IMG/VR virus record: IMGVR_UViG_3300044796_000657
Span: 1-64,000 of that record
Length of the DNA: 64,000 nt
Direction: 5' to 3' (one strand)
Positions 32,632-64,000 of the stretch are shown here, piece after piece. Position numbers and translations under genes: made by a program. The notes below the pieces were generated by a model. That model was not told the DNA's origin and ran no database searches. It was given only the letters and a program-made list of their open reading frames with translations. Numbering within the stretch: position 1 is the stretch's first letter; each line of letters opens with the position of its first letter.

Positions 32632-32676
32632 AATATTAACTCCTATTGGCGGGTTTACACCAATAGGGTTGTATGG

Positions 32677-32862
32677 TCACTCCAATTCCAAGAAGCATCG
32701 TCCGCCGATCACTTTGATGCTCTTGATATTGTAAGACGTTCCGGCTGGTTCGCATTGGGCGACAAGCGAAGTTTCGCCGTCAACTTCAATCTCCTCACCA
32801 GTGTCGGGGTCGTTGCCGTTCAAGAGCGATGATAGAGCGGCATGAAGTTCGTTCGGGTTCAC
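32677..32862 (-). CDS. Cassette ORFan
   Basis: GGAG SD + GTG; TGA stop is inside the site. Confidence 0.75.
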   Translation of the reverse strand: MNPNELHAALSSLLNGNDPDTGEEIEVDGETSLVAQCEPAGTSYNIKSIKVIGGRCFLELE

Positions 32863-32974
32863 GGCATAATCTCCAGAGCTTGGGTTTACACCAATAGGAC
32901 TGTATGGTCACTCACTGCCGTCTGCACTGGCAATCGTTGTGGGCTTGCACACGATCTATGCATGGTGCTGCACA

Positions 32975-33298
32975 CTAGCTTGGGCTATTCGCCTCGGATT
33001 GAATGACGAGAACGGCGACCCAATTACCCCGCTCATTCTTGGCGTATTGAACTTTGTTGAGGATGCCTTTATTGGCTTCCAAGCGGCGTAGGGCTTCCGT
33101 TCTCATTGCCCGGTAGCTGCCCACCATTTCAGGATAAACGGCGTTTGCGGTCGGCCAGTCCCAACCGCTGGTAATATCGCCGGGGCAATGATTCTGCTTT
33201 GCCGTGAAGGCAAGATAGGCCAGAACACGGTTAATGCCCTTGATTAATTGGGCATCCTTCATCTCACCAACGGGCTTCGGGAATTTTGGCTCTTTCAT
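32975..33298 (-). CDS. Cassette ORFan
   Basis: AAGGAG SD; 107 aa. Confidence 0.8.
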   Translation of the reverse strand: MKEPKFPKPVGEMKDAQLIKGINRVLAYLAFTAKQNHCPGDITSGWDWPTANAVYPEMVGSYRAMRTEALRRLEANKGILNKVQYAKNERGNWVAVLVIQSEANSPS

Positions 33299-33335
33299 GG
33301 CTGGTCTCCTTGTACCCGTTGGGTTGTATGGTCAC

Positions 33336-33550
33336 TCAGGCTACGTCTTCATGCGGTAGGTCGTCGCTATTGACGACGATAACGAGTTGATCGCCTTCCG
33401 AACCGCCCTTGCTGTAAACGACATTGAACAAACTGAAAGTTAAGTCAGGTTCGGTGCCGTGGTGAGACATGAGCAGAGTAGCGGGGCAATCATCGCTCAA
33501 GTGTTCATGGCTTTGCGAATATCCCCGACACTGACGGTGTGGACGGCCAT
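33336..33550 (-). pseudogene. Cassette ORFan with a 1-nt frameshift
   Basis: AAGGAG SD; MAVHTVSVGDIRKAM joins EHLSDDCPATLL...EDVA* if one G is added near 33505; 215 nt; stop abuts the site. Confidence 0.6.
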
Positions 33551-33584
33551 AACATTGTCTCCTTGTACCCGTTGGGTTGTATGG

Positions 33585-33821
33585 TCACTCCCATACAAGG
33601 CTAATGCCCTTGCGAGAGAGTTTGACACGGCGACGATCTTGGCGGGAAGGCTGAGGGCCGACATTGATGCGATACAGTTGATCCAATTCGGCACAAGCGG
33701 CATCATACTTCCGAAGGGCATGGACATAAGCAACGCCTTGCAGTCCATGAAGTTTGGCGCCGCATTCTTGTTTCTTGGCTTTGAGGCGGACCTTTTCGGC
33801 CTCATATTCGCTCTTGTTCAT
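33585..33821 (-). CDS. Cassette ORFan
   Basis: TGA stop inside the site. Confidence 0.75.
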   Translation of the reverse strand: MNKSEYEAEKVRLKAKKQECGAKLHGLQGVAYVHALRKYDAACAELDQLYRINVGPQPSRQDRRRVKLSRKGISLVWE

Positions 33822-33859
33822 GTTAACTCCACCCCTTTGATACTAGGGGGATTGTATGG

Positions 33860-34294
33860 TCACCCCTTGACGAATTCACCGGGTTGAGCATCAAAGAGCT
33901 TGCGGGCTTCTTTCAGCGTCGGGAACGATTCCCAGAATACCCGTTTGCCGTTGCCGAAATCGTGCTGCCGAACGTGAAAACAAGCGTGTTCGTGCCACAA
34001 GTCCGTATCGACGCTTTCTTCTGTGCTTTTGCGTTCAATGTAGCCACAAGCGAAGGAATAGGCCGTTAGGCGTCCATCCTTGCTACGGAAGCTTGGCGAC
34101 TTGTAATTGCGGCTGATTGCGTCCAGCATTTGAGCGTAGGAGCATTGCTTGGCGTGGATCATGCCCGTCAACGCTTTGTATTCGTCGGGGAGGCAAACGC
34201 TTTCAATGTAGTTCGCCCATCCTTGCGTGATAGGCGGCATCTTTGCCTTGCATTCGGCGATAATGGCGATTGCCCTTGCTTGTGAAATTCGCAT
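33860..34294 (-). CDS. Cassette ORFan
   Basis: GGGGAG SD; TGA stop inside the site. Confidence 0.8.
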   Translation of the reverse strand: MRISQARAIAIIAECKAKMPPITQGWANYIESVCLPDEYKALTGMIHAKQCSYAQMLDAISRNYKSPSFRSKDGRLTAYSFACGYIERKSTEESVDTDLWHEHACFHVRQHDFGNGKRVFWESFPTLKEARKLFDAQPGEFVKG

Positions 34295-34333
34295 TTCAAT
34301 TTCTCCCCGTTTGGTATCCAGTGGGATGTATGG

Positions 34334-34576
34334 TCACCGCAAAGAAACGGGTGCTATTGCCAGAATGAGGTCTTCACCCTTGGCCGTAATGTTAACTTGG
34401 CTATTGCCGTCCTTTTCCACTTCTTCCAGCAACTCGGCGATATTATCAGACTTATCGCCCAGACGATACGCCAGAACCAAAGCCTTATCAATGGCTTTCT
34501 GAAACGAATTGGCGTAATGAAGCTCCTGCAGCACGGCGATCCCATCCCGGCTGATGATTGCGACGATGAACAGCAT
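34334..34576 (-). CDS. Cassette ORFan
   Basis: GAGGGG SD + ATG 34576; TGA stop inside the site. Confidence 0.75.
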   Translation of the reverse strand: MLFIVAIISRDGIAVLQELHYANSFQKAIDKALVLAYRLGDKSDNIAELLEEVEKDGNSQVNITAKGEDLILAIAPVSLR

Positions 34577-34615
34577 TTCAATCCCCTCTTGGTACCACTT
34601 GGCTTGTATGGTCAC

Positions 34616-34834
34616 CTACTTCGGGTCCGACCACTGACCCATGACGATTTTTTCCTTGCCCGTCTTGGCTTTCTTGATCGCTTCCTTGGCCGATTCGGCT
34701 TCGACCTTGGCGATCCAATACATACCGGCGCTGAGACGATCCCGATTATCGCCGTCAATGTTCTTGTGAGTGCGATAGCCCCGACTCTTGGCAGGCCAAT
34801 TACTATAACACTCAACATAATAAATTTTCGGCAT
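34616..34834 (-). CDS. Cassette ORFan
   Basis: GAGGG SD; TAG directly abuts the site. Confidence 0.8.
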   Translation of the reverse strand: MPKIYYVECYSNWPAKSRGYRTHKNIDGDNRDRLSAGMYWIAKVEAESAKEAIKKAKTGKEKIVMGQWSDPK

Positions 34835-34897
34835 GACGAACCCTCTTAGTTAACATCACCGGTGTATGGTCACATTAAACATTAACATCCTGCCACC

Positions 34898-34980
34898 GTG
34901 ACCATACATGCTGTGAATAGGGCTTTGATTTACATTTGTATATCTTTATTCAAAGTCTTATTCATGGTGTGTATGGTCAC
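34898..34980. repeat. Inverted-pair element copy 2 (83 bp, near-perfect hairpin)
   Basis: 11-bp terminal inverted repeat plus TGAATAGGGCTTTGA/TCAAAGTCTTATTCA inner stem. Confidence 0.85.
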
Positions 34981-35057
34981 AGAGGGTGTTGTACGGTTAA
35001 AACGATCAATCCGGGGGCGCTTCCACCCTCGGATTGATCGCAAGGCTGCCGAATTGT

Positions 35058-35114
35058 TTAGCCTTCATAGCCGAAGTCCCGTTCGTCGTCGTAGTCGTCG
35101 GGGTCGGGCGGCAT
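35058..35114 (-). CDS. 18-aa acidic micropeptide cassette
   Basis: AAAGGAG SD; MPPDPDDYDDERDFGYEG; between a site and a hairpin. Confidence 0.45.
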   Translation of the reverse strand: MPPDPDDYDDERDFGYEG

Positions 35115-35146
35115 AGTGGTCTCCTTTCATTGTTAAGGTTGTATGG

Positions 35147-35365
35147 TCACTCCAAGAGAGCGGCCAGCAATTCCTCATCGGACAAGTTTTCTGGAACGTC
35201 GGGCGGCAGTCCAAGGCGTTCCCGCTCATCAACAATTTGCTTTTCGTACTGTTTCACCCAGACTTGACGCAATTTACGTTCGTTGTCATTCTTGGCAGAT
35301 GCTAACCGCTGGCGCTCATGACTTAGTCCAAGTTCAAGAGCGTGTAAATGGCTTAGGTCTTTCAT
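35147..35365 (-). CDS. Cassette ORFan (coiled coil)
   Basis: TGA stop inside the site. Confidence 0.75.
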   Translation of the reverse strand: MKDLSHLHALELGLSHERQRLASAKNDNERKLRQVWVKQYEKQIVDERERLGLPPDVPENLSDEELLAALLE

Positions 35366-35383
35366 ACCTATTGGCCTGTATGG

Positions 35384-35617
35384 TCACTTCTTTTTCTTCT
35401 TTTGCGTTTCCATTCGTTTGAGCATTTTGCCAAGCTGGTGAAGATCAACCGGCTTATGCATCCTCAATTCCAGTTTATCGGCGAGTTCACGGGTCGTTAA
35501 CTGCCCATGTTCAGCAGTGATTTCGACAATTAGAGTTTTTATGTGCCCCTCCAAGTCGTACCAACTACTGGACGCTTGGTTACTAATGCCTTCGTTTGGC
35601 TTGTCCGTTTCTTTCAT
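35384..35617 (-). CDS. Cassette ORFan, possible winged-helix
   Basis: HGQLTTRELADKL...QLGKMLKRM; TGA stop inside the site. Confidence 0.7.
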   Translation of the reverse strand: MKETDKPNEGISNQASSSWYDLEGHIKTLIVEITAEHGQLTTRELADKLELRMHKPVDLHQLGKMLKRMETQKKKKK

Positions 35618-35651
35618 GGCTCACCCCCTTGGTAACCATAAGGGTGTATGG

Positions 35652-35927
35652 TCACCCGAAAAGGAGGTGCGTGTGGATGATGTATTCCCGGCGGGTTTCG
35701 TCGGGAAATGTAGTATCGCTGAATTCACCGCTGACGCCGGGCAATTCACCTTCCGGCACTTGATCGCCCTTGAGGAAAGAGAAGCCAGCGTAAACGTCGG
35801 CTTCATAGAGAACACCTTCGAGAATGGAATTCCAACCGGCCCGCAGGTCAGGAGAACAATCCTTGCTCTCCCGGTTGAGCGTGTTCACCCTCTGGATCAA
35901 TCCTTTGACATGAACAGTTTGCCGCAT
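35652..35927 (-). CDS. Cassette ORFan
   Basis: GAGG SD; TGA stop inside the site. Confidence 0.8.
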   Translation of the reverse strand: MRQTVHVKGLIQRVNTLNRESKDCSPDLRAGWNSILEGVLYEADVYAGFSFLKGDQVPEGELPGVSGEFSDTTFPDETRREYIIHTHLLFG

Positions 35928-35942
35928 GGTATCGCCTCTTGG

Positions 35943-36653
35943 TTAACCATTAGCCTGTATGGTCACCTTCTTGTCGTCGTATTCTTTCATGCCTTCGTAT
36001 GTGTCAAGTTCGCTTGCGGCCCGTTCGTTCATTTTGTAGGCGTTGACTTGATCGCCGACGCACGCTAAGAGCCATTCCAAGCGGTTCACCGTGATGCCCG
36101 CAGGAACGAATTGAGGCGGGAACGTCCACGTTCCTTTGATTGCCTCGGCACACGCTTTCAGGAAGATCAAAGCGTAAAGGCTATTGTGCCAACCGTGCGT
36201 ATAAAGCCCGTAGATTTGCGCCGGGGTGTTCGCACCGTGCGCCCATTCCGGTACCGGCGTCCATCGTGTATCATGCTTGGCGGAAAGAGCTACCGATGTT
36301 TCGCCGTGGTGGTTGTAGTAGGTCGGCTTTTTGTCGCTGTATTTGAGTTTGTGGAAGCGTTGGATCGTGTCCGCCTTCGGTTCCTTCGGCCACATTTGAG
36401 AAATGACGGGGTTGCAGCCATTGGCCCGCATATGACGGGCGAGGGCGTGTAGGAATTCTTCGAGGCGTTCGCTGATAAGTAGGCCCGGCGGGGTGTGTTT
36501 CGTCGGGTAATCGCCCATACAATCGGCAAACGCCACTTGCGGGTTAACCGCTTTGTTGGTGTATCCCCAACGATTATCGGGGTGAAGGTCTGACGGGAAG
36601 ATCATAAAGATATGATCCGGGTTCACCAAACTACGGAATTCAATAACGGCCAT
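35943..36653 (-). CDS. Cassette ORFan (236 aa)
   Basis: AGGAG SD; reads through the site and stops at the TAA of GTTAAC. Confidence 0.8.
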   Translation of the reverse strand: MAVIEFRSLVNPDHIFMIFPSDLHPDNRWGYTNKAVNPQVAFADCMGDYPTKHTPPGLLISERLEEFLHALARHMRANGCNPVISQMWPKEPKADTIQRFHKLKYSDKKPTYYNHHGETSVALSAKHDTRWTPVPEWAHGANTPAQIYGLYTHGWHNSLYALIFLKACAEAIKGTWTFPPQFVPAGITVNRLEWLLACVGDQVNAYKMNERAASELDTYEGMKEYDDKKVTIQANG

Positions 36654-36771
36654 GATAAAGACTCCTAGAAGGATGTTAACAACTATCAGGCTGTATGGTC
36701 ACCGAAGATACGCCCCTCGGAACTACCGAGAAGCGTAGGGAATATGCCGGGGGAAGTGGACAAGACATGGA

Positions 36772-37056
36772 TCAAGCGGCGTGGCGTTCGTATTCGGCGG
36801 CTTTGGTCGTGTAGTGCTTACAAAGTTCACGCCAATCGGATACGGGAAACTTCCGCAGGGTCAGAGCGAGAAGAGGGGCATTCTCCTTATCGGCCCGTTG
36901 CGGGCAATTCCGCATATCAAGGGCCGCACGGGTTTCAATGTATAAGATAATGGCGTACTCTTCGTTGCCCTTGTGCTTCTTGATCGTTTGCAGCACGTTC
37001 GTCAAAACGGGCTGACAATTATCAATCAGCATCAAAACGGTTTCGAGGGGTTCCAT
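36772..37056 (-). CDS. Cassette ORFan
   Basis: AAGGA SD + ATG 37056. Confidence 0.75.
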   Translation of the reverse strand: MEPLETVLMLIDNCQPVLTNVLQTIKKHKGNEEYAIILYIETRAALDMRNCPQRADKENAPLLALTLRKFPVSDWRELCKHYTTKAAEYERHAA

Positions 37057-37107
37057 GATCGCAATCCTTTTGAGGTTGATGTTAACAACCATCGGGGTGT
37101 ATGGTCA

Positions 37108-37269
37108 CTAGGACACTTTCAAAGCCTCAATCTTTTCAATCGCCCATTCGAGACCTTGTATCGTGCCTTCATTCTTCCACTTCGCACGATTCCCCGAAAA
37201 ATTGCCAGCGTCGGCCTCTTCTTGACACTGACGCTGCAACTCTTTAAGTTCAGCAAGAATCTTTTCCAT
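37108..37269 (-). CDS. Cassette ORFan (53 aa, not in ORF track)
   Basis: MEKILAELKELQRQ...ALKVS*; the G of TAG is the first G of the site. Confidence 0.7.
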   Translation of the reverse strand: MEKILAELKELQRQCQEEADAGNFSGNRAKWKNEGTIQGLEWAIEKIEALKVS

Positions 37270-37316
37270 GATCGTTTACCCTTGTGGTTGATGTTAACAA
37301 CCATCGGGGTGTATGG

Positions 37317-37577
37317 TCACAACCACTCGCTTGCGAGGGCTTCAACAATCGGCATGTTGATGTACATTCCGTCGTCCGTTTGATAGACACCAGCTTCGCC
37401 CAACAGAACGGGGGAGCTGAACTTGGTGCCATCCTTCCGAAAAATCTGAGCGGAAGGGAAACGACTGTCTGACACTTCAACGAATGCCCGTTTGCCAGCA
37501 CAACGCATGTGCATGCACACTTCGCTGTGAGGCAATTCAACTTCGACCTTTTGGCCGGGAACTACTGGTTGCCGCAT
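37317..37577 (-). CDS. Cassette ORFan
   Basis: GGAG SD; TGA stop inside the site. Confidence 0.8.
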   Translation of the reverse strand: MRQPVVPGQKVEVELPHSEVCMHMRCAGKRAFVEVSDSRFPSAQIFRKDGTKFSSPVLLGEAGVYQTDDGMYINMPIVEALASEWL

Positions 37578-37621
37578 GATCGTTCTCCGTTTTGGAAGTT
37601 AACAACCATCGGCCTGTATGG

Positions 37622-37846
37622 TCACTTGCCAAAAACTTTCTTGTGCCGCTTGGCCTTGGCTTTGCGTGCCCGTTCCTTAGCGGTTCGCTTGCGTTTGCCT
37701 ACACCATTGGCATCGGTAGGCGTTCCCCGTTGCTTGCTGTCAAAACGGGGTGGTCGGCGGCGTTCTACTTCGGGGTGAGGCCAAACGGGCCAGCAAGCCC
37801 CGATAAGAGCGAACACGGGCAAAATGCGGGGATGTCGGGCAATCAC
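37622..37846 (-). CDS. Very basic cassette ORFan
   Basis: GAGGAG SD, GTGA overlap; TGA stop inside the site. Confidence 0.65.
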   Translation of the reverse strand: MIARHPRILPVFALIGACWPVWPHPEVERRRPPRFDSKQRGTPTDANGVGKRKRTAKERARKAKAKRHKKVFGK

Positions 37847-38217: not shown

Positions 38218-38260
38218 CGGTTTACCCTCTTAGTTAACCTTTGCGGTGTATGGTCACAAG

Positions 38261-38839: not shown

Positions 38840-38886
38840 GATTGCGTCTCCTTGGGATGAATGTTAACAACTATCGGGGTGTATGG

Positions 38887-39393: not shown

Positions 39394-39416
39394 GACTTGA
39401 ACTCCCTTGGTGCCAA

Positions 39417-56300: not shown

Positions 56301-59094
56301 TGTCGTTGATACGTAAAGCGAATTCTTCGGTCATGGTGTGAGAGGGCTGCACAGTGAAGTCTTTATTCTTCACAGCAAGCCAACGCAGGGTGATGATCCT
56401 TTTGTCTTTGTCTTCAAAAGCAAAATCATCCACATTGTTAGCAGATTTGATGCGGTAGCCTTTGTAGTTCGCTTGCCAATTGGGCTTGTTGTAGACATAA
56501 TCAATAATTTCGGTGATTTGTGCTGGACTTGGATGCGGTTCAACTGCCACGACATAGTCTTTTTGATGAATATCTAACATGAATTCGTTGGTCATGTTGT
56601 CAATGTTAACATCAAGCCAATTGGGGATATTGACGCCATCCTTGGATACTGTGAAGTTGGTGACTCTGCTGGCGTGCCAATCCCAATTTGTTTTGATGGG
56701 CTTCTTGGTTTTTAGGTCAACGCTACCGTGTTCAGAAATTTCATAATGATGATCTTCAATGAATTGATAGCGTTTGGGAGGAGAGATTGCACGCCCCAAA
56801 TCAACAGTGTATGTGACTTTGTATGCTTTATTGGCGGCAAAGGCCAAGACCTTATAGGCTTGTGGCATGGTCATTCTATACAATAATAAGTTTTGATTTT
56901 CCCAATTAAGTTTCTCACCATTAGTGGTAGTCACATCAAATTTGTCAACGAAAGCCGCCGACCAATTGAACTCTTCTTTGTTGGCAAGATCGGTTGTATT
57001 TTCAGATTCGGCTAACTTGTAACCATTAGTCAGCGACCAAATCACACCCTTAAGTTTATTTGTGTATGTGACTTTGTATTGTTTGTGAGCTGCAAACCAT
57101 TTGATGACGGCAACTTGTTCGGCTGTGCAGAGTTTGGAAGCATCAGGCACTACGACTGACTTGGGTGTAATGATGAAATCCTTTATGTTATGATCAACAA
57201 ACGACTTAGCTTGTTGCTCAAAGCTCATGTAAAAGAGCCACTTTCCAGCTTCCTCCTTATTGGCGGTAATGATGTACTCCCCGATAGAAATGACACAAAC
57301 CTTGCAAGTAGTCACGTAGTGTTGATGAATGTTTGTTCCTGTGACGAGAGCCGTTTCTTTGTATTTGACCGTATCCCCTTTTTCGAGGGCTGCGTAGATC
57401 GATGTGATGAATTCGTTACGCATGTTGGGCGTTATCACGAAATCATTCATGTCAATCTCATTGAAGAATATCGCAGCAGACCGTGTTGTGATGTAGAAAT
57501 GTGATTCGTAGGCGCCGTCGGTGTAAATACTTGCGACAAGGTTGTTTGCACCTTGATAACTTACCACCTGCTTGTTCTTGATAGCAGCTTTGAGGCTTTC
57601 AGGGGTGTGGATAGATTTTGCGAAATGTTGAGGTGCGTGCTTTGGCGTATCGCTTTCAGAGGTGGGTTTTGCGAAATCACTTACATCAACATCCTTGAAG
57701 AAATATCTGCTTTTCATTACATCAAAGTGATAATTGCCCCAAGGATGATAAATCCCCAAATCAGCAATCTGAACGGGCAGAGTCGCAACTCCGACGATTC
57801 GACTGCGTTTGTATTGTGTGATTTCATTTTTGCTGATTTTCAGAATGAGATCCTTCAATTCGGTTTGTCGTTGCGTGAAGACATTCTTGTCTGTCACAAT
57901 GACATCTTTTTCATTTATTGTGGTACAGCATGTCCACTTGCCGTCTATGACGAAAAATGGCTTTCCGTCTTCTTCTGATATATTGTTAACTAAAACGCCC
58001 TTATAGGTGATTATGGACTGTTCAGCAGTTGGTTGAGCTTGAAATTGTTTGTAAAGTTTGACTGACCAATGTTCTTGTAGTGTGAAATCATTTATGTCAA
58101 CATCGCTAAAGAACGTAGCAATGTGTTGACTTGCGTGCTTTGGCGTATCATGAAAGAATGGCTGTCTATCATCGAGATAAATGCTGTATACAGTTTTGTC
58201 TTTGTATTTGATGATATGAGTTTCCAAAGCCTTTTTGAGACTTGCTGGAGTATGTCCTGATTTGTTTTCTGTGATCGTGAAATCCTTCATGTTAACATCG
58301 TTGAAAAACAACGTATACATTTCACTTCTGTAACCGAAAAACGAATTGCCATTACCCGGAATGGTAATGCTGGCAACGGGTCTGCCCTTGTATTGAACAA
58401 GGTGGTTGCCTTCCATTGCCGCCTTGAGGCCTTCAGGAGTGTGCGTGGATTGTTGTGGTAATGGGCGTTCTGTCCATTCAAAATCTCTGTATTGCTTGTT
58501 TGTCCATTCAATCCAACGACCGCCACATTGGAAACTATTGACACCTGCTCCCGTGACTTCTACGCCTAGATAAGTCGTCTTCCAAGTCGTGTACTTCTCG
58601 GATACGAATTTGATGATGTTGTCGATTTGTAATCCGGTTATGCATGGCGGATTAGAGAAGTCAACATAGTTAACATTCGCCCAATGATACGTGGTTTGAT
58701 TATCGCACGAAAATCTGTCATCGTCACTGTTATCATCATCGCTATTGATTTGGGAGATACGTTGTTTCTTATAAAACACTTCGCTGCCCGATTTGAAGCG
58801 GGCAATGATTTCAGCAATTTGCTCTTTGGTCATAGGTGGTTGGCCATTGACCCAGTCGATGGGTTGATCTTTTTTATCAAACACGGCGAAATGAGAAATT
58901 GATTGTCCAACACCAGCTTGGTGACCACCAGAACTGGAAGGGTATGATGAAATATAAAAAGTACCTATTTGATTTGCGTTGGCATTTCGTTTAAAACGAA
59001 GAACGGTTGAGCCACGAAAGAAAACTTTGTATTTGGAACTACTGCAGAAGTCGTAAAGTTTGTTGAAGAGAGCAAGCGTGATGATGTTGGACAC
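53308..59094 (-). CDS. Large tandem-module repeat protein (~1928 aa)
   Basis: AAGGA SD + GTG 59094; repeated MT(E/D)EFA..YKG..IEDY and FAANK.Y.VTYTN..W.W..VD.F.V.KDGVNIDW units. Confidence 0.9.
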   Translation of the reverse strand: MSNIITLALFNKLYDFCSSSKYKVFFRGSTVLRFKRNANANQIGTFYISSYPSSSGGHQAGVGQSISHFAVFDKKDQPIDWVNGQPPMTKEQIAEIIARFKSGSEVFYKKQRISQINSDDDNSDDDRFSCDNQTTYHWANVNYVDFSNPPCITGLQIDNIIKFVSEKYTTWKTTYLGVEVTGAGVNSFQCGGRWIEWTNKQYRDFEWTERPLPQQSTHTPEGLKAAMEGNHLVQYKGRPVASITIPGNGNSFFGYRSEMYTLFFNDVNMKDFTITENKSGHTPASLKKALETHIIKYKDKTVYSIYLDDRQPFFHDTPKHASQHIATFFSDVDINDFTLQEHWSVKLYKQFQAQPTAEQSIITYKGVLVNNISEEDGKPFFVIDGKWTCCTTINEKDVIVTDKNVFTQRQTELKDLILKISKNEITQYKRSRIVGVATLPVQIADLGIYHPWGNYHFDVMKSRYFFKDVDVSDFAKPTSESDTPKHAPQHFAKSIHTPESLKAAIKNKQVVSYQGANNLVASIYTDGAYESHFYITTRSAAIFFNEIDMNDFVITPNMRNEFITSIYAALEKGDTVKYKETALVTGTNIHQHYVTTCKVCVISIGEYIITANKEEAGKWLFYMSFEQQAKSFVDHNIKDFIITPKSVVVPDASKLCTAEQVAVIKWFAAHKQYKVTYTNKLKGVIWSLTNGYKLAESENTTDLANKEEFNWSAAFVDKFDVTTTNGEKLNWENQNLLLYRMTMPQAYKVLAFAANKAYKVTYTVDLGRAISPPKRYQFIEDHHYEISEHGSVDLKTKKPIKTNWDWHASRVTNFTVSKDGVNIPNWLDVNIDNMTNEFMLDIHQKDYVVAVEPHPSPAQITEIIDYVYNKPNWQANYKGYRIKSANNVDDFAFEDKDKRIITLRWLAVKNKDFTVQPSHTMTEEFALRINDTFTKCNMLYKGKRICGVSLLGKASDTVMEKIQINTVGVADFVQVKYTNIEDYTMPEGLLVSLEQIAKIKLFAANRVYEVTYTNPQVSNKLPTVPHFVTNGFKRESLNNHIDIAKTTWDWKISYVDNFKVTKDGVVIDWLNTEPEPTYNMTDEFANKIIFACRNMKCPRYKNEQIAYFAGLSNNLSVIEATEFVLVGKQYSPISILYTNMEDYEIFEPTYTMTEEFASRIHKIFTKCEMLYKGKRICALRPQGTVMEMLINTVDVGDAIEVRYTNIEDYTMPAVGEVVTAEQITKIRLLAANKVYEVTYTNPQMGNTLASAPYFLTSGFKRASVHTHIDLAKTSWGWSGCYVDNFKVTKDGVNIDWLDWLNTLPEPTYNMTDEFANKVALACRNSEYPKYQGNIISHFIGLNGDLEVVRGKGVGFVFAGKHTLIHNTNIEDYELKALTRITPEQIEKIKLFAANKAYQVSYNIQGTVTIYSLGNGYRSNKTQFPSGTSFMDLAKDHWNWESCYTEQFKVVKDGVNIDWQTAKATNMTEALAKQIFDAHWDHKEVKYKGIGLTGFNKGKGEVMSQVTYYYGFESPRKEILISEANIEDFTIEEEKKATQKSFNMTEEFAQKLFKANVCTVKYQGKQVTAMLRNVGDSKQSLIQHMTITVADDKYHTIVNVKETRIEDYIWPRIVVTMAQVEKLKLFAAHKHYRVTYTNDDKVKVWQFTNGYPHPINSAYNKDLADAAIMNCFNWKECYLDNFEVKEGDVNIDWQTTHPVIYFKVGVQVLENQIKYIKAFEGKVLYKNQEVTSMSGLFFYSTDANTPIYWNSTKYEDFAFIPKINISDEQIRFLIDGLKNHHTQIRYKGQQIFCYASSIDGSFTMASGPVVGCFWWKNVNFSDFSIKDTTPTITTSDNANVCSSTKSAEEIGFAYENFLRTFAHRRKWDTGDIGSIIAKIREAKFYGDNNEQDVHFIATANGWLWAKIGTEKLEEEIANLIKALEVEVAN

Positions 59095-59322
59095 GGTAGA
59101 TTCCTTGTGGATGTTAACGGTAGATTGTGGATGTCGCCAACCAATGTAACAGGGAAGATCCATTGGCATGACTGGTTCTCAAAATATAAGGAGGTCTTGG
59201 ATGGAACAGAAAAAGAAGCCACCTCGCATGAAAACCATAAAGCGGTTCCCCGATGGATACGCTTTACATTCGTGGGTTTCTTCCGTCAGTATGTCATAGT
59301 AAATGGCGTTCATGGCAATCCT

Positions 59323-59535
59323 TTACATGAGAACAACGGTTAGTATTACACTTGCCACATATGTCAGTAATCCGCATGTGTAAACCACTCTGCGAATCCA
59401 CCAACGATCACTCCGAGACACATCCTTCGTTATGAGATTGAAAGCGATCAAATCCACAATCGCAAAAATAATTGTGAGGATCAGGAAAACAATTAAGATT
59501 GCGCCGACAAAATCCGGGGAGGAGATTTTGGACAT
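59323..59535 (-). CDS. Two-TM membrane protein
   Basis: AAGGA SD; two hydrophobic helices. Confidence 0.75.
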   Translation of the reverse strand: MSKISSPDFVGAILIVFLILTIIFAIVDLIAFNLITKDVSRSDRWWIRRVVYTCGLLTYVASVILTVVLM

Positions 59536-59919
59536 TTCAACATCCTTTTAGGGATTAGAAGCCCTTGTCTTCCCGTTACTTGAGGCAAATGGCAACAATG
59601 AAAGCAATGGCAAGGGCAAACTTCCACATTGCTGCAACGAAGTGGAGAGGGTTGTAGTGTTTGGCCGTCGATGAATAGTGAAAACTCACCAGTCCGCTCA
59701 CGAAAAAGTGAACAACAGCAATAATCAACATGATCTGGACAAAAGTATTCATCGGAGCCTCATGATGTTAAGTCTTAGGATGTGCCAAACAATTAAGGCG
59801 CATACCATTGTTTTGAAAGTCCAAGACAACGCAGACTCGATAGTAAATGCGGCTTTGCCCCACGGCAGGATGATTGCCAACAATGCCAGTATTGCAAGAA
59901 TGCTGTTCATTGTTAACCC

Positions 59920-60150
59920 TTACTTGATTGCCTTTTTGAGTTTGCCAGTGATGCTGATGCGGCGGTAGATGCCATGTTTGTGTTGGCACTGCTCGCAACC
60001 GCAATCGTTGCATTTCAGGCAAACGTAAATTTGTTTATTGTTACGCTGTGTCATTTCGCCGTAGCACTTTTCACACCACAAACGATCAGGCCAGAAGAAG
60101 CCCATCCACAACGAAACCACACGCTTGTAAACCTTAATAAACTTTTCCAT
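59920..60150 (-). CDS. Cys-rich hypothetical protein
   Basis: CEKC, CLKCNDCGCEQC. Confidence 0.65.
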   Translation of the reverse strand: MEKFIKVYKRVVSLWMGFFWPDRLWCEKCYGEMTQRNNKQIYVCLKCNDCGCEQCQHKHGIYRRISITGKLKKAIK

Positions 60151-60174
60151 GACCAAACCCTCAGTGTGGGCTAG

Positions 60175-60203
60175 ATCGTATCATATTCCATTCTTTTTGT
60201 CAA
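60175..60203 (-). promoter_or_regulatory. Sigma70-type promoter
   Basis: TTGACA-17-TACGAT on the - strand. Confidence 0.7.
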
Positions 60204-60215
60204 GCAAAAAATGTG

Positions 60216-60560
60216 TTATTTTTCTTCTTTTGTAAGGCGATTGTATTCGTCTGATATTGAACGGAGATCACCATGAATTTCCTTGCTTAAATTACGTCGC
60301 ATGTCATCTTCGATTGACCACGCCATTTCTAGGATTTTGGCAAGCGTTCCGAGTTGTAAAGATGTGAGAGTGTGTTCCTCAATGCCGATACGATGGGCGT
60401 TGTCGATGCCGTACAGGAAGCCACCAACGGCACTAACCGAACGACATTTTGCGTCGTAGTGAAGCCGTGAGCGTTCCATGAGGAAGTCGATTTCCTCTTG
60501 GGTGAATTCAATGATGATTTTAACTTCGTAGTCAAATTCTTTCGTTTTCATATAGCCCAT
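60216..60560 (-). CDS. Hypothetical protein
   Basis: 114 aa, overlaps the upstream stop. Confidence 0.75.
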   Translation of the reverse strand: MGYMKTKEFDYEVKIIIEFTQEEIDFLMERSRLHYDAKCRSVSAVGGFLYGIDNAHRIGIEEHTLTSLQLGTLAKILEMAWSIEDDMRRNLSKEIHGDLRSISDEYNRLTKEEK

Positions 60561-61177
60561 ATTTCTTCGGTGGTAGGAGTGCGGCCTAATTCAACAATCA
60601 ATGCCTTTTGGAGGTTTTCCAATCGTTCTGTTTCAATGACAATCTGCGCCCCATTGCGACCTTCGGTGACATTTTCCAAGTCTAGTTCAGCACCACGCAA
60701 GTCGCCGAAGATTTCAGCATCGGCTCTTTTAACTTTCTTCGGAATGGGTGCGGTGGCAGCTTGATCGGCCTTTAGGATGGCATTTTTAACCAAATCCAAA
60801 GGTGCCCGGTAAATTTTGCCGTTTTCTGCTGATACTTCAATTACGTTCTTTTCGCCCTTCGGCAAGATGCCAGTGATGATTGCTTTGATAATTTTACGAC
60901 CAACTCTGATTTCAATGGTCTTACGAAAGTCTTCCAATCGCAAGCCGAAAAGTTCATGGTATTTGTGAAATGCGGTTTCGCTTGGCGAAGTCGTCGGGGC
61001 TTTGTCAGTGCCGAAATCGACTTCAATGGTCGTGCGAAGACTTTTGGCTGAATAACGAATGGTGCCGAAGCGAATGTTAATTTTCAGTTCGGCATTGAGA
61101 GGAGCCAAAACGGCCTTGATCCGGTCTGAAACCTTTTTGGCTTGGCTTTCGTTCCATTTGTCTGCTTTGGTACTCAT
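60548..61177 (-). CDS. Hypothetical protein
   Basis: GGAG SD; 209 aa. Confidence 0.8.
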   Translation of the reverse strand: MSTKADKWNESQAKKVSDRIKAVLAPLNAELKINIRFGTIRYSAKSLRTTIEVDFGTDKAPTTSPSETAFHKYHELFGLRLEDFRKTIEIRVGRKIIKAIITGILPKGEKNVIEVSAENGKIYRAPLDLVKNAILKADQAATAPIPKKVKRADAEIFGDLRGAELDLENVTEGRNGAQIVIETERLENLQKALIVELGRTPTTEEIWAI

Positions 61178-61398
61178 ACAATCTCCAATAGATGTTGGAT
61201 CATTTGGTCGGCAGTTACCGGCTTTGCCTTACTCCCACACGAACAACACAGAGAGCATTCTTCGCAGTTAAGGCAAGCCCCGGTTGCTTTCTTGTTCTGT
61301 TTGTGGCCGTATTGTTTGCCACAACCGGGACAAGCAGTATCCTCTTTCGGCAAACCGTGTGATGAAATATCAAGGCCAGTAAGATTATCCTTTGCCAT
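61174..61398 (-). CDS. Zinc-binding hypothetical protein
   Basis: CPGC, CLNCEECSLCCSC. Confidence 0.75.
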   Translation of the reverse strand: MAKDNLTGLDISSHGLPKEDTACPGCGKQYGHKQNKKATGACLNCEECSLCCSCGSKAKPVTADQMIQHLLEIV

Positions 61399-61430
61399 GA
61401 CACTCCCCTATTACCTTTTAGGGTGTATGG

Positions 61431-62297
61431 TCACCAACCATTGATATAAGGCAAAAACGGATAGTAAACACGTACATTGACATGATTACTTTTCATGATG
61501 CGTAGAATGTCTTCCATTCTCATTGCCTTGAAAATCGCATCAGCCATCCATACGGGACAATTAGCCCACAATTCATAAGTTCCATCACCACTATTGCGAA
61601 GACTGCCATTAGTCTCATACGGAACAAAACGAAGTTCGGCAGTGAAGCCCAAACTGGTAAGTGTTGTATGGTGTGGTGTCAATGCGCCACGGGCATACTT
61701 TCCCGCTCCATACCCTTGCGATGAATAAGAATACGTTGAGGATGTGTCAAGCAGTTGAGGTTCACCGCCAACAATCGGCGTTACTTGTTTGGCAAGCGAC
61801 CACAATAAATCCTCACGTTCTTTCTTTTGTTTGGCAAGTTGAGCATCGTATTCACTGATCTTGTACTTGGTTAACAATCTATTCTTCAACGCTTCAATGA
61901 AAGCATCGTCCAGAGGATCAAGGTTTTTCTTCTTGGGTTGACGACGCTTTTGCTCTTGTAATAGGAGTTGAGTGAATTCCTTCTGCGCCGTTTCTTTGGT
62001 TGTTTTGAAAGTGGCGTAAAATGTGCTTTTGAATGGGTCTTGCTCGTATGCTGCTTTGTATTGTTCGTTTGGTGTGCCTGATACACTCAACGTTAACAGC
62101 GGAGCAATTTCAATGGGCTTGACTGCTTTGACTTGCGGCTTAGTTGAAAGGAGATCGTAATTGCAGAAATCACAGATGATCGTGCCTTCAGGGATGCGAT
62201 TGAGGCATCCGGGGCATTCGTCCATTGTGAAATCGTAACCACATTGGCATACTTCGCCTTGCGGTCGTGCTTTACATTGTGGACAAGTAGTAATCAT
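61431..62297 (-). CDS. Protein with N-terminal double zinc ribbon
   Basis: CPQC..CQCG..CPGC..CDFC; TGA stop inside the site. Confidence 0.8.
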   Translation of the reverse strand: MITTCPQCKARPQGEVCQCGYDFTMDECPGCLNRIPEGTIICDFCNYDLLSTKPQVKAVKPIEIAPLLTLSVSGTPNEQYKAAYEQDPFKSTFYATFKTTKETAQKEFTQLLLQEQKRRQPKKKNLDPLDDAFIEALKNRLLTKYKISEYDAQLAKQKKEREDLLWSLAKQVTPIVGGEPQLLDTSSTYSYSSQGYGAGKYARGALTPHHTTLTSLGFTAELRFVPYETNGSLRNSGDGTYELWANCPVWMADAIFKAMRMEDILRIMKSNHVNVRVYYPFLPYINGW

Positions 62298-62315
62298 ACC
62301 AATAGGGATGTATGG

Positions 62316-62681
62316 TCACAGACCGCCCGACTTCTTGAGAACACGCCCGTTAACGGCATTGCCAATTTTTTGCTGTGAAACTTTGATTTTAGGCAGTTTG
62401 CGTTTACCAGCCCACTTCAGCATTGTAGGCGTCAAGATAATCGTTGCGTTTGGATCTTTTGAACCAATCGTAATGATACTAGCGTAGAAGCTCACCCTTG
62501 CCTCAGTGTTGGCCAATCGCATGATCTTCTCAATGATTGCTGTGGTTTCGGCTTCATTGAGTTTGGGGAATGTATCACCACGCTGAAATGCCGGAATCAA
62601 ATCAATGATTCCTTGTCTTGTCGCAACAGCTTGAGCAGCCCTAGCAGGATCGCTCAAGTCGTTTAGTTCTGGGAATGGCAT
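62316..62681 (-). CDS. Cassette ORFan
   Basis: AAGGAG SD; TGA stop inside the site. Confidence 0.8.
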   Translation of the reverse strand: MPFPELNDLSDPARAAQAVATRQGIIDLIPAFQRGDTFPKLNEAETTAIIEKIMRLANTEARVSFYASIITIGSKDPNATIILTPTMLKWAGKRKLPKIKVSQQKIGNAVNGRVLKKSGGL

Positions 62682-62915
62682 GTTAACTCTCCTTTTGAAC
62701 ATTCTCAAACAAAGTACGGAGAACCATAGAGACTTCGCTGTTTTCGCAATCGTTAGCAATGTCGTCAAATCCAAGTTGTAGATCAGGCTCATCGTATTGG
62801 TATGCAAAATTGAGAATTCGCATAACAGTACCGAGAGCCAACAACTAGCTTTTCAGGCGTTCATGATCAACGGTAGCAAATAACTGTTTAAGAGGCTTGC
62901 GTGTACTTGTCATGA

Positions 62916-63128
62916 TTATCTCATACATTGGAAGGGAACGGCAGTGACGTTGATGCTGATGTCATCTGATTTGATGGGGCAAATGACATCACTTGCGATT
63001 TTTTTGGCATGGTCTGCATTCTGAATGCCTTGGACGCCAGAGTTAAGGTAAAACGTAGGCACTTGATGCGTCAAATCGCCTTTTGCTGTGTGATGAACAA
63101 CAGTGGCATCAATGGCATATAGTAGCAT
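62916..63128 (-). CDS. Cassette ORFan
   Basis: AGGGAG SD + ATG 63128. Confidence 0.75.
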   Translation of the reverse strand: MLLYAIDATVVHHTAKGDLTHQVPTFYLNSGVQGIQNADHAKKIASDVICPIKSDDISINVTAVPFQCMR

Positions 63129-63165
63129 GACGTTCTCCCTTATAACCATGTGGGTGTATGGTCAC

Positions 63166-63513
63166 TCATATCATGGGATCAAAGGCAAGGAAAGTGTTAA
63201 ACTTAGGCCATTGTAAATGAGTTGCTAAGTCTTTGTTTTTATTGGCCCACTTGGTATTACAAGCGTAACAAGCCATAACAGTGTTAGGTCGTTCTATAAA
63301 AAGTTCTATATCATCAAATAGAACCCAAACACCATCAAGTGCCCCACCCTTACTAACAGGTCGTATATGTTCAACTGTTGCCATATAATCAGGAAATTGT
63401 ATCCCTTGAGGCTGCGGTTGCGGCAACTCCGTTAAACCAAAACACCAGAAGCATGTTCCCATTTGCTTGAAGAACAAATTATCCAATACCTCTCGCTTTC
63501 TCTTGCTTCCCAC
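63166..63513 (-). CDS. HNH endonuclease
   Basis: CFWC...ATVEHIRPVSKGG...N.V.AC..CN; TGA abuts the site. Confidence 0.85.
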   Translation of the reverse strand: MGSKRKREVLDNLFFKQMGTCFWCFGLTELPQPQPQGIQFPDYMATVEHIRPVSKGGALDGVWVLFDDIELFIERPNTVMACYACNTKWANKNKDLATHLQWPKFNTFLAFDPMI

Positions 63514-63657
63514 GACAGTTTCCTATTTTAATTCAACATCAATTTTACATGATGTTAAGGTTACCACGGAATGGTATTCGGCTTTGACTCGTATTTGCTT
63601 GTGCTGACATCCTGCAAGCAACAAGATAAGCATCCATGCTTTCATTTGAACCTTTCG

Positions 63658-63927
63658 TTAGTTGATGCCAAGTGCGTGATAATTGGCCCGCACATCGGCC
63701 ATATGGTTTCGGTAAATGTTTGTGTGATTCGGCAACACGCTGACCAGATCATTACGGTGAACTTGAAACAGTTGGGGATACTGCCGAGGGTTGATACCGT
63801 ATTTCACCTTAACCTCTTCAACAGTGAGGTATCCCGGCGATGGCATCCAAGCAGTCTTGCAAACAACCTCCAGAATGATCGCTTCACGACTTCCGGGTTC
63901 AGGAATTTGGCTGAATGCTGCTGCCAT
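63658..63927 (-). CDS. Cassette ORFan
   Basis: GAGGGG SD directly after the 63958 site. Confidence 0.7.
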   Translation of the reverse strand: MAAAFSQIPEPGSREAIILEVVCKTAWMPSPGYLTVEEVKVKYGINPRQYPQLFQVHRNDLVSVLPNHTNIYRNHMADVRANYHALGIN

Positions 63928-64000
63928 GATAAAGCCCCTCGTTGTTAACCATAAGGGTGTATGGTCACGTTATAGTTCAGGGGAAAATTCACAGATGTTG

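What the first reader, a model, noticed from the sequence alone, without database searches (positions are those of the whole stretch)
32660..63968. The site extends into a ~25-bp pseudo-palindrome with recombination-site geometry
Seen in coding orientation: GTGACCAT-ACACCCTT-ATGGTTAAC (63958), GTGACCAT-ACAGGCTA-ATGGTTAAC (35956), GTGACCAT-ACACCCCG-ATGGTTGTTAAC (37098, 37310), GTGACCAT-ACAACCCA-ACGGGTAC (33325). The consensus is GTGACCATACAnCCn5G(G/T)T(A). The left arm is invariant, the right arm is a degenerate inverted copy, and the 8-bp spacer is asymmetric. Established: inverted arms around a 6-8-bp directional spacer is the layout of tyrosine-recombinase sites (loxP, dif). In the copies with the longer spacing, the TGACCA-17-TAACAT reading with TGn also fits an extended -10 promoter, so the two models compete.
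Basis: partly seen in the sequence, partly recalled or inferred. Interest (0 to 1): 0.75.

Follow-up and report, generated by a model that had tools for sequence, protein, structure and literature searches.

The report
Repeated promoter of a giant phage
The 11-base word GTGACCATACA, present 104 times in a 430-kb phage genome from peat, is most likely the phage's own promoter, starting RNA 12 bases after the word; it is not a recombination site, and the proposed "right arm" is mostly start-site context.

Summary
The cited copies exist as written. GTGACCATACA occurs 68 times exactly in the window (chance about 1) and 104 times in the 430-kb virus record, against only 7 one-mismatch variants.

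The logo has a sharp 5' edge and CCC at positions 12-14. It carries only 0.2-0.6 bit at positions 17-23. The "right arm" matches the inverted left arm at 3.2 of 8 positions on average. Only 17 of 104 copies reach 6 of 8, and none is perfect. The arm is absent in a 60% GC relative that keeps the 11-mer.

What is conserved in all four related phages is a pyrimidine-purine step at positions 22-23. In two of them, genes without a ribosome-binding site start with ATG exactly at position 23. These look like leaderless mRNAs, so RNA 5' ends are inferred at position 23.

Copies point the same way as the genes. They sit 37-57 nt before start codons, often follow strong terminators, and also occur on the gene-free strand.

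No tyrosine recombinase gene was found. The sigma-70 reading (TGACCA-17-TAnnnT) fits only 8 copies.

Best reading: a phage-specific promoter class whose reader (sigma factor or polymerase) was not identified. No transcript 5' ends were mapped.

The parts
4988..63968. Span of all 68 exact copies of GTGACCATACA in the window (14 on the plus strand, 54 on the minus strand), plus one copy with one mismatch at 43698.
63946..63968 (-). Cited copy, motif positions 1-23. The start codon of an 89-aa gene is at position 42. This is one of the most symmetric copies (ATGGTTAAC follows).
35944..35966 (-). Cited copy. It lies in the last codons of the 236-aa gene 35943-36653. The next gene starts at position 40.
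37086..37108 (-). Cited copy of the long-leader subtype (start codon at position 53). It is followed by TAACAT 17 nt after TGACCA. It shares 90% of positions 12-41 with the copy at 37310.
37298..37320 (-). Cited copy, a paralogous promoter-plus-leader cassette of 37098 placed in front of an unrelated gene.
33313..33335 (-). Cited copy with a weak right arm (ACGGGTAC). Its leader is duplicated at 33578 in front of a different gene.
35363..35387 (-). Copy whose position 23 is the A of the ATG of a 72-aa gene with no ribosome-binding site, implying a leaderless mRNA. The JGI gene call on the same DNA uses the same start.
62295..62319 (-). Copy whose position 23 is the A of the ATG of the 288-aa zinc-ribbon protein gene 61431-62297. 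There is no ribosome-binding site and no alternative start.
32020..32364 (.). Cluster of seven copies upstream of the UvrD-like helicase gene. Four are tandem at 40-52 bp spacing with AGCA instead of CCC at positions 12-15.
28702..29869 (.). Cluster of eight copies downstream of the helicase. Seven are on the plus strand, antisense to the gene direction. One is on the minus strand, and its downstream sequence is conserved in relative L129.
43092..43227 (-). Three tandem copies upstream of the ParB-HTH protein gene 41585-42928. The first follows a terminator.
34863..34980 (.). Composite module of forward copy, reverse copy and forward copy. The first two are convergent and 83 bp apart. The same module occurs at 32152-32289, 40235-40354 and 45878-45983, and in relative L129.
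   Evidence: alignment A1
41538..41564 (-). Strong intrinsic terminator (12-pair stem plus T run). It ends 22 nt before the copy at 41506-41516, which precedes the next gene.
39963..39990 (-). Strong terminator 25 nt upstream of the copy at 39928-39938.
40896..40914 (-). Terminator 20 nt upstream of the copy at 40866-40876.
43252..43271 (-). Terminator 25 nt upstream of the copy at 43217-43227.
40370..40439 (-). Mini transcription unit: a copy, then about 10 nt, then a 13-pair hairpin with a T run, with no ORF. It looks like a gene for a small RNA of about 48 nt.
4988..5010 (+). One of only two copies in the plus-strand gene block. It is on the plus strand, 54 nt before a 217-aa plus-strand gene, so its orientation follows the gene.

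Best explanation
GTGACCATACA (core CCATACA), together with a phage-specific 3-4 nt extension (CCC here), is the recognition block of a phage-specific promoter class in a clade of uncultivated large phages. The block occupies -22 to -12 (-9 with the extension). RNA starts at motif position 23, a purine preceded by a pyrimidine, which is 12 nt after the last A of the word. Each copy heads a short transcription unit. Most units have a 14-35 nt leader with a Shine-Dalgarno sequence and a small gene. A few are leaderless genes whose ATG is the first base of the RNA. Some are ORF-less units of about 45 nt that end in a terminator. The semi-conserved 'right arm' (A17 T18. G20 K21 T22 R23) is the initiation region (-6 to +1), not a second protein-binding arm; its partial symmetry with the left arm is incidental or auxiliary. 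What is shown: the counts, the invariance, the orientation, the phasing to start codons, the ATG peak at position 23, the conservation in relatives, and the terminator-then-motif order. It was not identified. Because the same word sits at almost every gene junction of a region whose gene order differs between relatives, it probably also serves as a microhomology joint for cassette shuffling. That would be a by-product, not its main function.
For: Abundance and invariance: there are 68 exact copies in the window against about 1 expected. There are 104 exact copies in the genome against 7 one-mismatch variants, only one of which sits in a promoter-like context.

Logo: it has a sharp 5' edge with no information upstream of position 1.

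Orientation and phasing: 61 of 104 copies have a same-strand start codon at positions 23-65 (median 41). Plus-strand genes carry plus-strand copies.

Leaderless starts: six ORFs of 72-288 aa start with ATG exactly at position 23, with no Shine-Dalgarno sequence and no alternative start. There is no ATG at positions 22, 24 or 25. In relative L135, 6 of 22 copies have ATG at position 23, and three of these are starts chosen by an independent gene caller.

Start-site dinucleotide: position 22 is a pyrimidine and position 23 a purine in 78 of 104 copies, against about 26 expected. The step is kept in L129, L132 and L135 even though positions 12-21 differ between the phages.

Conservation: the word is kept in phages whose helicase is only 51-58% identical and whose GC ranges from 37 to 60%.

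Terminators: four strong terminators lie 20-25 nt upstream of copies that precede the next gene.

Gene-free strand: copies on the strand without genes, and back-to-back divergent pairs, make sense only for a DNA-level element.

Gene class: structural genes lack the motif (terminase at 332 kb), with only 2 copies between 180 and 430 kb.

Host promoter type: canonical TTGACA-17-TAGTAT/TATAAT promoters also occur, so the host's housekeeping promoter is a different sequence.
Against: No transcript 5' end was mapped. The one metatranscriptome that holds the region is available only as assembled contigs, with the same flat profile as the DNA run.

No reader was found. There is no PF00940, PF00562 or sigma-54 match and no beta-prime catalytic motif. 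The large ORFans give no polymerase signal. The 261-aa sigma ORF has no homologues in other contigs. The -22 to -12 geometry does not fit -35/-10 recognition by sigma-70-family proteins.

About half of the window copies (32 of 68) are not within 120 nt of a called gene. Several of these lack the pyrimidine-purine step, so some copies may have another role.

The weak left-right symmetry in G000 and L129 is statistically real and is not explained by this model.
Confidence: 0.75

Rival explanations
1. Stoperator-like operator. The asymmetric word is the binding site of a phage repressor or global regulator (for example the ParB-HTH protein or the 61-aa HTH protein). The regulator would block or tune transcription at every gene junction, as the L5 repressor does in Cluster A mycobacteriophages.
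For: The site is asymmetric, highly conserved, present in many copies, in one orientation relative to transcription, and at gene junctions that overlap stop codons. There are tandem clusters upstream of the ParB-HTH and helicase genes. The record is labelled a provirus. Stoperators are described in PMC9283540 and PMC6550527.
Against: It does not explain the ATG peak at exactly position 23 in two phages, the conserved pyrimidine-purine step at positions 22-23, the minimum distance to Shine-Dalgarno sequences, or the motif-then-terminator mini units. No integrase gene was found. A regulator could still bind the same word in addition to its promoter role.
Confidence: 0.08
2. RNA-level element. 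The word is read in polycistronic RNA by a sequence-specific endoribonuclease or a translation factor. A cut at position 22/23 would create the leaderless and short-leader mRNAs. Alternatively, the hairpin between positions 1-8 and 17-24 would tune translation of the next gene.
For: The copies sit at intercistronic positions and are phased to start codons. 33 of 104 copies can pair at least 5 bases of positions 1-8 with positions from 15 onward. Mean folding energy is -3.6 against -2.7 kcal/mol for shuffled right halves.
Against: Copies directly after strong terminators would rarely be transcribed from upstream. Copies and divergent pairs on the strand with no genes over about 100 kb lack an upstream promoter. 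The hairpin is weak and is absent in L132.
Confidence: 0.07
3. Site-specific recombination site (tyrosine-recombinase or integron-like). The word and a degenerate inverted arm around an 8-bp spacer would be cut and rejoined, excising or inverting gene cassettes.
For: A minority of copies look like 8-8-8 pseudo-palindromes. Every small gene is bounded by the word, and gene order differs between relatives. Four convergent pairs 83-86 bp apart exist.
Against: The mean arm match is 3.2 of 8, with no perfect copy. The arm is not conserved in L132 or L278. There is no PF00589 match in 430 kb. The phasing to start codons and the leaderless ATGs are not expected for such a site. The deletion-like joints seen in the read lay have flanks under 31 nt, so they are assembly artefacts at repeats.
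Confidence: 0.02
4. The main role is as a recombination joint of the PeSL kind. The repeated cassette would exist chiefly because it lets homologous recombination swap ORFan genes between co-infecting relatives, with promoter activity secondary.
For: The region is dense in ORFans. Only 10 L129 segments among about 25 called genes have a G000 match, and these are in a different order. Promoter-plus-leader cassettes are duplicated in front of unrelated genes (37098/37310/38880 and 33325/33578), while upstream flanks are never shared. Terminator-promoter composites are present. PeSLs are described in PMC2839356 and PMC4122927.
Against: An 11-14 bp identity is short for homologous recombination. 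Breakpoints between close relatives were not mapped. The strict invariance of every base and the conserved start-site geometry point to a sequence-reading protein, not to selection for homology alone.
Confidence: 0.05

Closest known systems
Promoters of phage-encoded RNA polymerases (the T7/T3/SP6 group; the early promoters of phiKZ-like and N4-like phages). Named from my own knowledge, not checked against a paper.
   Same: A phage-specific, nearly invariant word unrelated to the host sigma-70 consensus. It has a fixed distance to the RNA start, is repeated through one part of the genome, and is conserved among related phages.
   Different: No single-subunit or multisubunit polymerase gene was detected in the 430 kb. 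The conserved block ends at -12 rather than running through +1. There are 104 copies, almost one per small gene, compared with about 17 in T7.
Single-element promoters read by divergent phage sigma factors (T4 late TATAAATA with gp55; phiEco32 TAATGTATA with gp36). Named from my own knowledge.
   Same: One short block with no -35 element, read by host polymerase carrying a phage factor. This genome has two sigma-70-family ORFs.
   Different: Those blocks sit at about -10. Here the invariant block is at -22 to -12, and the -11 to -7 stretch varies between phages. The 261-aa sigma ORF is not conserved in relatives.
PeSLs, the composite promoter-terminator cassettes of T4-like phages (PMC2839356, PMC4122927)
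   Same: Repeated regulatory cassettes in front of small ORFan genes in a plastic region. Terminator-promoter composites are present, and cassettes are shared in front of unrelated genes.
   Different: According to those papers, PeSLs carry an early promoter plus a stem-loop, and their role was shown through indel breakpoints between near-identical phages. Here the word is not sigma-70-like and no breakpoints were mapped.
Stoperators of Cluster A mycobacteriophages (PMC9283540, PMC6550527)
   Same: An asymmetric site of about 13 bp, in many copies, in one orientation relative to transcription, at gene junctions.
   Different: Stoperators are not phased to start codons. Here there is an ATG peak at position 23 and a conserved start-site dinucleotide.
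Start-associated sequences (SAS/ESAS) of Cluster K mycobacteriophages (PMC3203893)
   Same: A conserved 13-bp word just upstream of many start codons, of unknown reader. A subset has an extended form with imperfect inverted repeats, in which the left repeat is better conserved than the right.
   Different: The SAS scanning sequence given in that paper (GGGATAGGAGCCC) contains GGAG, and the authors propose a role in translation initiation. Here the word lies upstream of the Shine-Dalgarno sequence and, by inference, upstream of the RNA 5' end.
loxP, dif and integron attC recombination sites (named from my own knowledge)
   Same: The layout in a few copies resembles arms around a spacer of about 8 bp.
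   Different: The second arm is degenerate and not conserved, no recombinase was found, and the copies are phased to genes.

Membership tests
Tyrosine-recombinase core site (loxP/dif type) | Two inverted recombinase-binding arms of similar sequence flanking a 6-8 bp spacer | tested here: not met
   The mean match of positions 17-24 to the inverted left arm is 3.18 of 8. 17 of 104 copies reach 6 of 8 and none reaches 8 of 8. The preferred T22 is a mismatch. The test is not significant in L132.
Tyrosine-recombinase core site (loxP/dif type) | A cognate tyrosine recombinase is encoded nearby | tested here: not met
   There is no PF00589 match at E <= 1 in the 430-kb record, while the control rang in 14 of 14 genomes. 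Caveat: 184 kb of the parent contig and the host genome were not visible.
Tyrosine-recombinase core site (loxP/dif type) | Recombination products (excised, inverted or deleted forms joined at the site) | tested here: inconclusive
   The only joints in the DNA and RNA runs have flanks of 21-31 nt at repeated cassettes, which is typical of assembly-graph artefacts.
   8 of 104 copies fit, no more than in other registers (0-10). In most copies the implied start would fall after the Shine-Dalgarno sequence.
Phage-specific promoter class | Orientation follows the downstream gene, and distance to the gene start is constrained | tested here: met
   61 of 104 copies have a same-strand start at positions 23-65 (median 41). 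Plus-strand genes have plus-strand copies.
Phage-specific promoter class | A defined RNA 5' end at a fixed distance from the word | tested here: inconclusive
   This is indirect only. ATG sits exactly at position 23, without a Shine-Dalgarno sequence, in 6 copies of G000 and 6 of 22 in L135. The pyrimidine-purine step at 22-23 is kept in four phages. No 5'-end data were available.
Phage-specific promoter class | Conservation of the word among related phages, independent of base composition | tested here: met
   L129 has 35 copies (42% GC), L132 has 26 (60% GC), and L135 has 22 copies of a variant with the same CCATACA core (37.5% GC). L272, L278 and L295 also carry it. More distant relatives L130, L133 and L134 have none.
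Phage-specific promoter class | A cognate polymerase or specificity factor | tested here: inconclusive
   There are two sigma-70-family ORFs but no link to the word. No polymerase was found.
Stoperator system (Cluster A mycobacteriophages) | Asymmetric sites in one orientation at gene junctions, bound by the immunity repressor | tested here: inconclusive
   Orientation and position fit. No repressor was identified and binding is not testable here. The phasing to starts is not a stoperator property.
PeSL mobile regulatory cassette | Indel or replacement breakpoints between close relatives coincide with the cassettes | not tested
   Only distant relatives (51-58% helicase identity) were available. 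Gene order differs but breakpoints cannot be mapped at that distance.
PeSL mobile regulatory cassette | An early sigma-70-type promoter plus a stem-loop terminator in one short unit | tested here: not met
   Terminator-then-motif composites exist, but the word is not sigma-70-like.

The most novel reading that the evidence does not exclude
A clade of soil, peat and water phages, including this one of at least 430 kb, uses a promoter architecture not described before. It has an invariant duplex block at -22 to -12 with a variable -11 to -1 stretch. This resembles sigma-54 promoters in geometry but not in sequence. The promoter fires in front of almost every small gene, makes leaderless mRNAs and a set of tiny RNAs, and doubles as the joint at which ORFan cassettes are exchanged.
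Probability: 0.3. Interest if true: 0.75.

Novelty: new variant of a known kind. Interest (0 to 1): 0.55.

Why it matters
If this reading is right, one 11-base word marks the transcription units of about 100 kb of unknown genes in a very large uncultivated phage and its relatives. That gives a ready-made map of about 100 start sites, a temporal gene class, several candidate small RNAs and a set of leaderless genes. It also gives a precise bait (the word) for finding the protein that reads it. That protein would be a new specificity factor or polymerase, because nothing recognisable is encoded. The word is also a practical marker for recognising members of this phage clade in metagenomes. For the original claim, the result is a correction: a striking pseudo-palindrome seen in a few copies disappears when all copies and the relatives are aligned.

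Tried and rejected
1. Transcript ends. The only RNA run holding the region is served as contigs. Its pieces break at the same repeated cassettes as the DNA run and its depth is flat, so it gives no start-site information.

2. Exact 14-mer scans of IMG/VR and of GTDB species genomes. These gave only single hits per contig, consistent with chance. No relatives and no host emerged.

3. Two-copy pattern scans. The scan of IMG/VR found nothing. The scan of metagenome contigs gave 37 contigs, but most are unrelated tandem repeats that happen to contain the word. Only L272, L278 and L295 are true relatives.

4. Close-relative search with the helicase and ParB-like proteins in IMG/VR found nothing.

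5. Hunt for a polymerase. The Pfam families for the T7-type polymerase, the beta subunit and sigma-54 gave no match. The catalytic-motif regular expressions found no plausible beta-prime motif. A PDB sequence search of four large ORFans and protein-atlas look-ups found nothing polymerase-like. The 994-aa protein looks Ig-repeat-like.

6. The 261-aa sigma ORF as reader. It has no homologues beyond itself, so it is not a clade-conserved gene.

7. The conserved 252-aa neighbour of the helicase. The model is of moderate quality. Its N-terminal domain recurs fused to helicases, so it is an accessory of the helicase rather than an obvious transcription factor.

8. Reaching the unseen 184 kb of the parent contig or the right flank. 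The record is not held, and my start-codon choices for the last genes were not on record.

9. GTTAACAT as a second motif. It is scattered and often part of the spacer between the Shine-Dalgarno sequence and ATG, so it is not a separate element.

10. MotA-box-like geometry (the word at -30 with a -10 hexamer at positions 23-28). Rejected because the start would fall after the Shine-Dalgarno sequence.

11. Literature search for the word found only PCR primers.

12. Complex prediction was not used. Docking a free sigma domain on DNA against shuffles was judged unable to decide anything.

Full report
**What is there.** The window is the first 64 kb of a 430,229-bp IMG/VR virus record. That record is itself bases ~240 to ~430,470 of a 614,480-bp peat metagenome contig. 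GTGACCATACA occurs 68 times exactly in the window, against about 1 expected by chance. It occurs 104 times in the record, 87 on the minus strand and 17 on the plus strand. Almost all copies lie between 28 and 172 kb.

Only 7 one-mismatch variants exist genome-wide. Just one of them (125270) sits in a comparable context. No other word in the genome is repeated on this scale.

**The logo and the palindrome.**
- Aligning all 104 copies gives no information upstream of position 1.
- Positions 1-11 are invariant by construction of the alignment.
- C is preferred at positions 12-14 (0.46, 0.88 and 1.21 bit).
- Positions 17-23 carry a weak pattern, A T n G K T R, at 0.2-0.6 bit.
- Against the reverse complement of GTGACCAT, positions 17-24 match on average 3.18 of 8. 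Permuted arms give 2.0, and 1 of 400 permutations does as well, so a bias toward symmetry exists.
- Only 17 copies reach 6 of 8 matches, two reach 7 and none reaches 8.
- The commonest base at position 22 is T (70 of 104). The palindrome would need C there (15 of 104).
- As RNA, the hairpin is worth about 1 kcal/mol over shuffled controls.

**Relatives.** Homologues of the adjacent UvrD-like helicase led to contigs from other samples.
- L129 (58% helicase identity, 42% GC) has 35 copies of GTGACCATA(CA).
- L132 (55%, 60% GC) has 26 copies.
- L135 (52%, 37.5% GC) has 22 copies of a variant, T-W-A-T-CCATACA-GAA, with an invariant CCATACA core.
- More distant helicase relatives L130, L133 and L134 have none.
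- Three further members, L272, L278 and L295, came from a two-copy pattern scan of metagenomes. The other hits of that scan are unrelated tandem repeats.

The downstream part differs between phages: CCCTGATAAGTAAC-like in L129, GCAC..AG.CAGAA in L132 and GAAT.. in L135. The inverted right arm is absent in L132. What all four phages share beyond the word is a pyrimidine at position 22 and a purine at position 23. The counts for pyrimidine at 22 are 85 of 104, 29 of 35, 18 of 26 and 20 of 22. The counts for purine at 23 are 91 of 104, 33 of 35, 23 of 26 and 17 of 22.

**Relation to genes.** With a simple gene caller, 61 of 104 copies have a same-strand start codon at motif positions 23-65, median 41. 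A purine-rich Shine-Dalgarno stretch lies in between. Copies in the plus-strand gene blocks are on the plus strand (4988, 317699, 345810). The TGA at motif positions 2-4 is the stop codon of the upstream gene in 34 cases, so the word sits exactly at gene junctions.

Six ORFs of 72-288 aa begin with ATG exactly at position 23. They have no Shine-Dalgarno sequence and no other plausible start. One begins directly with a zinc-ribbon motif. No copy has ATG at positions 22, 24 or 25. The JGI gene call for one of the six (start at 35365) agrees. In L135, six of 22 copies have ATG at position 23, and three of those are gene starts chosen by that collection's own caller.

A start codon with no leader in front of it needs to be at the RNA 5' end. 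So these twelve cases place an RNA 5' end at position 23. That position is also where the conserved pyrimidine-purine step lies.

**Initiation or processing.** Four strong minus-strand terminators lie 20-25 nt upstream of copies that precede the next gene. They are at 41538-41564, 39963-39990, 40896-40914 and 43252-43271. Seventeen copies lie on the opposite strand. This includes seven downstream of the helicase and one in each of four forward-reverse-forward modules. That strand has no genes, and so no upstream promoter, for about 100 kb.

Some copies are followed by about 10 nt and a terminator hairpin with no ORF (40429, 32354), which is the layout of a small-RNA gene. All of this fits a DNA element that starts transcription. 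It fits an RNA processing site poorly.

**Which promoter type.** With +1 at position 23, the invariant block covers -22 to -12. The -11 to -7 stretch is phage-specific and lacks the A(-11) and T(-7) of sigma-70 promoters. Five of those eight (TAACAT or TAACTT) lie close together at 36.7-38.9 kb, and three of them share near-identical leaders. Canonical TTGACA-17-TAGTAT/TATAAT promoters do occur, sometimes just after a copy (46936-46908; 82196 and 97614 in genome coordinates). The host consensus is therefore ordinary, and the word is something else.

The record has two sigma-70-family ORFs, of 261 and 185 aa. It has no T7-type polymerase, no beta subunit, no beta-prime catalytic motif, no sigma-54 and no tyrosine recombinase. 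For the T7-type family the control genomes also gave no signal, so that negative is weaker.

The large ORFans give no polymerase signal. The 261-aa sigma has no homologues elsewhere, which makes it a poor candidate for reading a word conserved across the clade. 184 kb of the parent contig could not be inspected.

**Gene content.** Motif-linked genes are mostly small ORFans. The exceptions are the helicase, a ParB-HTH protein, a Thg1-like protein and an AAA ATPase. DnaE, terminase, a tRNA synthetase and other large genes lie in the motif-free part. The word therefore marks a non-structural gene class, probably early or middle.

**Recombination, in a weaker sense.** Between G000 and L129 or L132, only the helicase and its 252-aa neighbour keep their order. 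The few shared small genes are shuffled, and most are not shared at all. Within G000, promoter-plus-leader cassettes are duplicated in front of unrelated genes, while upstream flanks are never shared. This resembles the PeSL cassettes of T4-like phages (PMC2839356, PMC4122927). It leaves room for the word acting as a joint for homologous exchange. That is a by-product reading, not site-specific recombination.

**Verdict.** The recombinase-site interpretation is not supported. The promoter alternative is supported, but with a different geometry from the one proposed. The element is best filed as a new promoter consensus of a known general kind (phage-specific promoters). It has an unusual -22 to -12 layout, an unidentified reader, and no experimental start-site data.

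Noticed in passing
window 32152-32289, 34863-34980, 40235-40354, 45878-45983; L129 2500-2620: A conserved composite module made of a forward copy, about 60 nt, a reverse copy (convergent, 83-86 bp span), about 25 nt with GTTAA..TTAA, and a second forward copy. The inner sequences ATGAATAG and CCGTTTCTTTCA are conserved between modules. The AAAGAAA.GG stretch after reverse copies is also seen in the 60% GC relative L132. Function unknown; it could be a sense/antisense RNA pair or an insulator.
   Followed up: partly
window 40370-40439 (-), 32290-32364 (-), 29859-29912 (+): A copy followed within about 10 nt by a strong hairpin and a T run, with no ORF. This is the layout of a very small RNA gene of about 45 nt. 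The hairpin at 29881-29912 also serves as the terminator after the helicase gene.
   Followed up: partly
window 43522-43552 (-): A terminator hairpin begins inside the copy, at motif position 11. Read-through RNA would terminate there, but RNA started at position 23 would lack the 5' half of the stem. This would be a built-in terminator/promoter switch.
   Followed up: no
window 46400-46940 (-): About 0.5 kb without a convincing ORF, behind a canonical TTGACA-17-TAGTAT promoter that directly follows a copy. It folds somewhat better than shuffles (z = -2). There is no Rfam match even at E <= 1. It may be a long non-coding RNA.
   Followed up: partly
window 44000-52000: Strong strand composition skew (GC skew -0.27, then up to +0.31; AT skew down to -0.39). 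The minus-strand sequence is C- and A-rich, and genes are sparse between 46.0 and 48.2 kb.
   Followed up: no
window, 18 copies (34 in the genome), e.g. ORF ends at 32677, 33585, 33860, 34334: The TGA at motif positions 2-4 is used as the stop codon of the upstream gene. It is in frame with the ATG at position 23 of the leaderless genes.
   Followed up: yes
window 29031-29789 (-): A 252-aa protein conserved next to the helicase in all relatives. It has a novel N-terminal domain (RSSV...DSIR), and its CPxC...C..C stretch resembles a topoisomerase-type zinc ribbon by eye; it has no significant Pfam match, though the helicase neighbour in relative L130 carries PF01396. In AlphaFold DB the N-terminal domain occurs fused to a 725-aa DNA helicase, so it is probably a helicase accessory.
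   Followed up: partly
whole record / parent contig: The record is labelled a provirus, but no integrase family match was found. It is the left 430 kb of a 614-kb contig, so the label may be a trimming artefact and the phage may be larger than 430 kb.
   Followed up: partly
window 53308-59169 (-): A 1953-aa ORF inside a motif-driven operon. It has no match in Pfam, PHROGs or PDB sequences, and only weak atlas neighbours.
   Followed up: partly
window 28198-28533 (-); 11566-11638 and 13191-13264 (+): An HNH endonuclease gene lies at the convergence point of the plus-strand and minus-strand gene blocks. tRNA-Lys(TTT) and tRNA-Arg(TCT) genes lie in the plus-strand block.
   Followed up: no
L135 (whole locus): In this lineage the first four bases of the word changed from GTGA to T-W-A-T, while CCATACA and the start-site spacing stayed the same.
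   Followed up: partly
G000 143989-146852 and 242054-243667: The 261-aa sigma ORF sits in a run with a Clp N-domain-like protein and a ClpX-like ATPase (both read by eye from the translations, not checked against a family library). Elsewhere the phage encodes a Ro60/TROVE-like protein, a class I (Ile/Leu/Val/Met-type) tRNA synthetase, DnaE, NadE and an aldehyde dehydrogenase.
   Followed up: no
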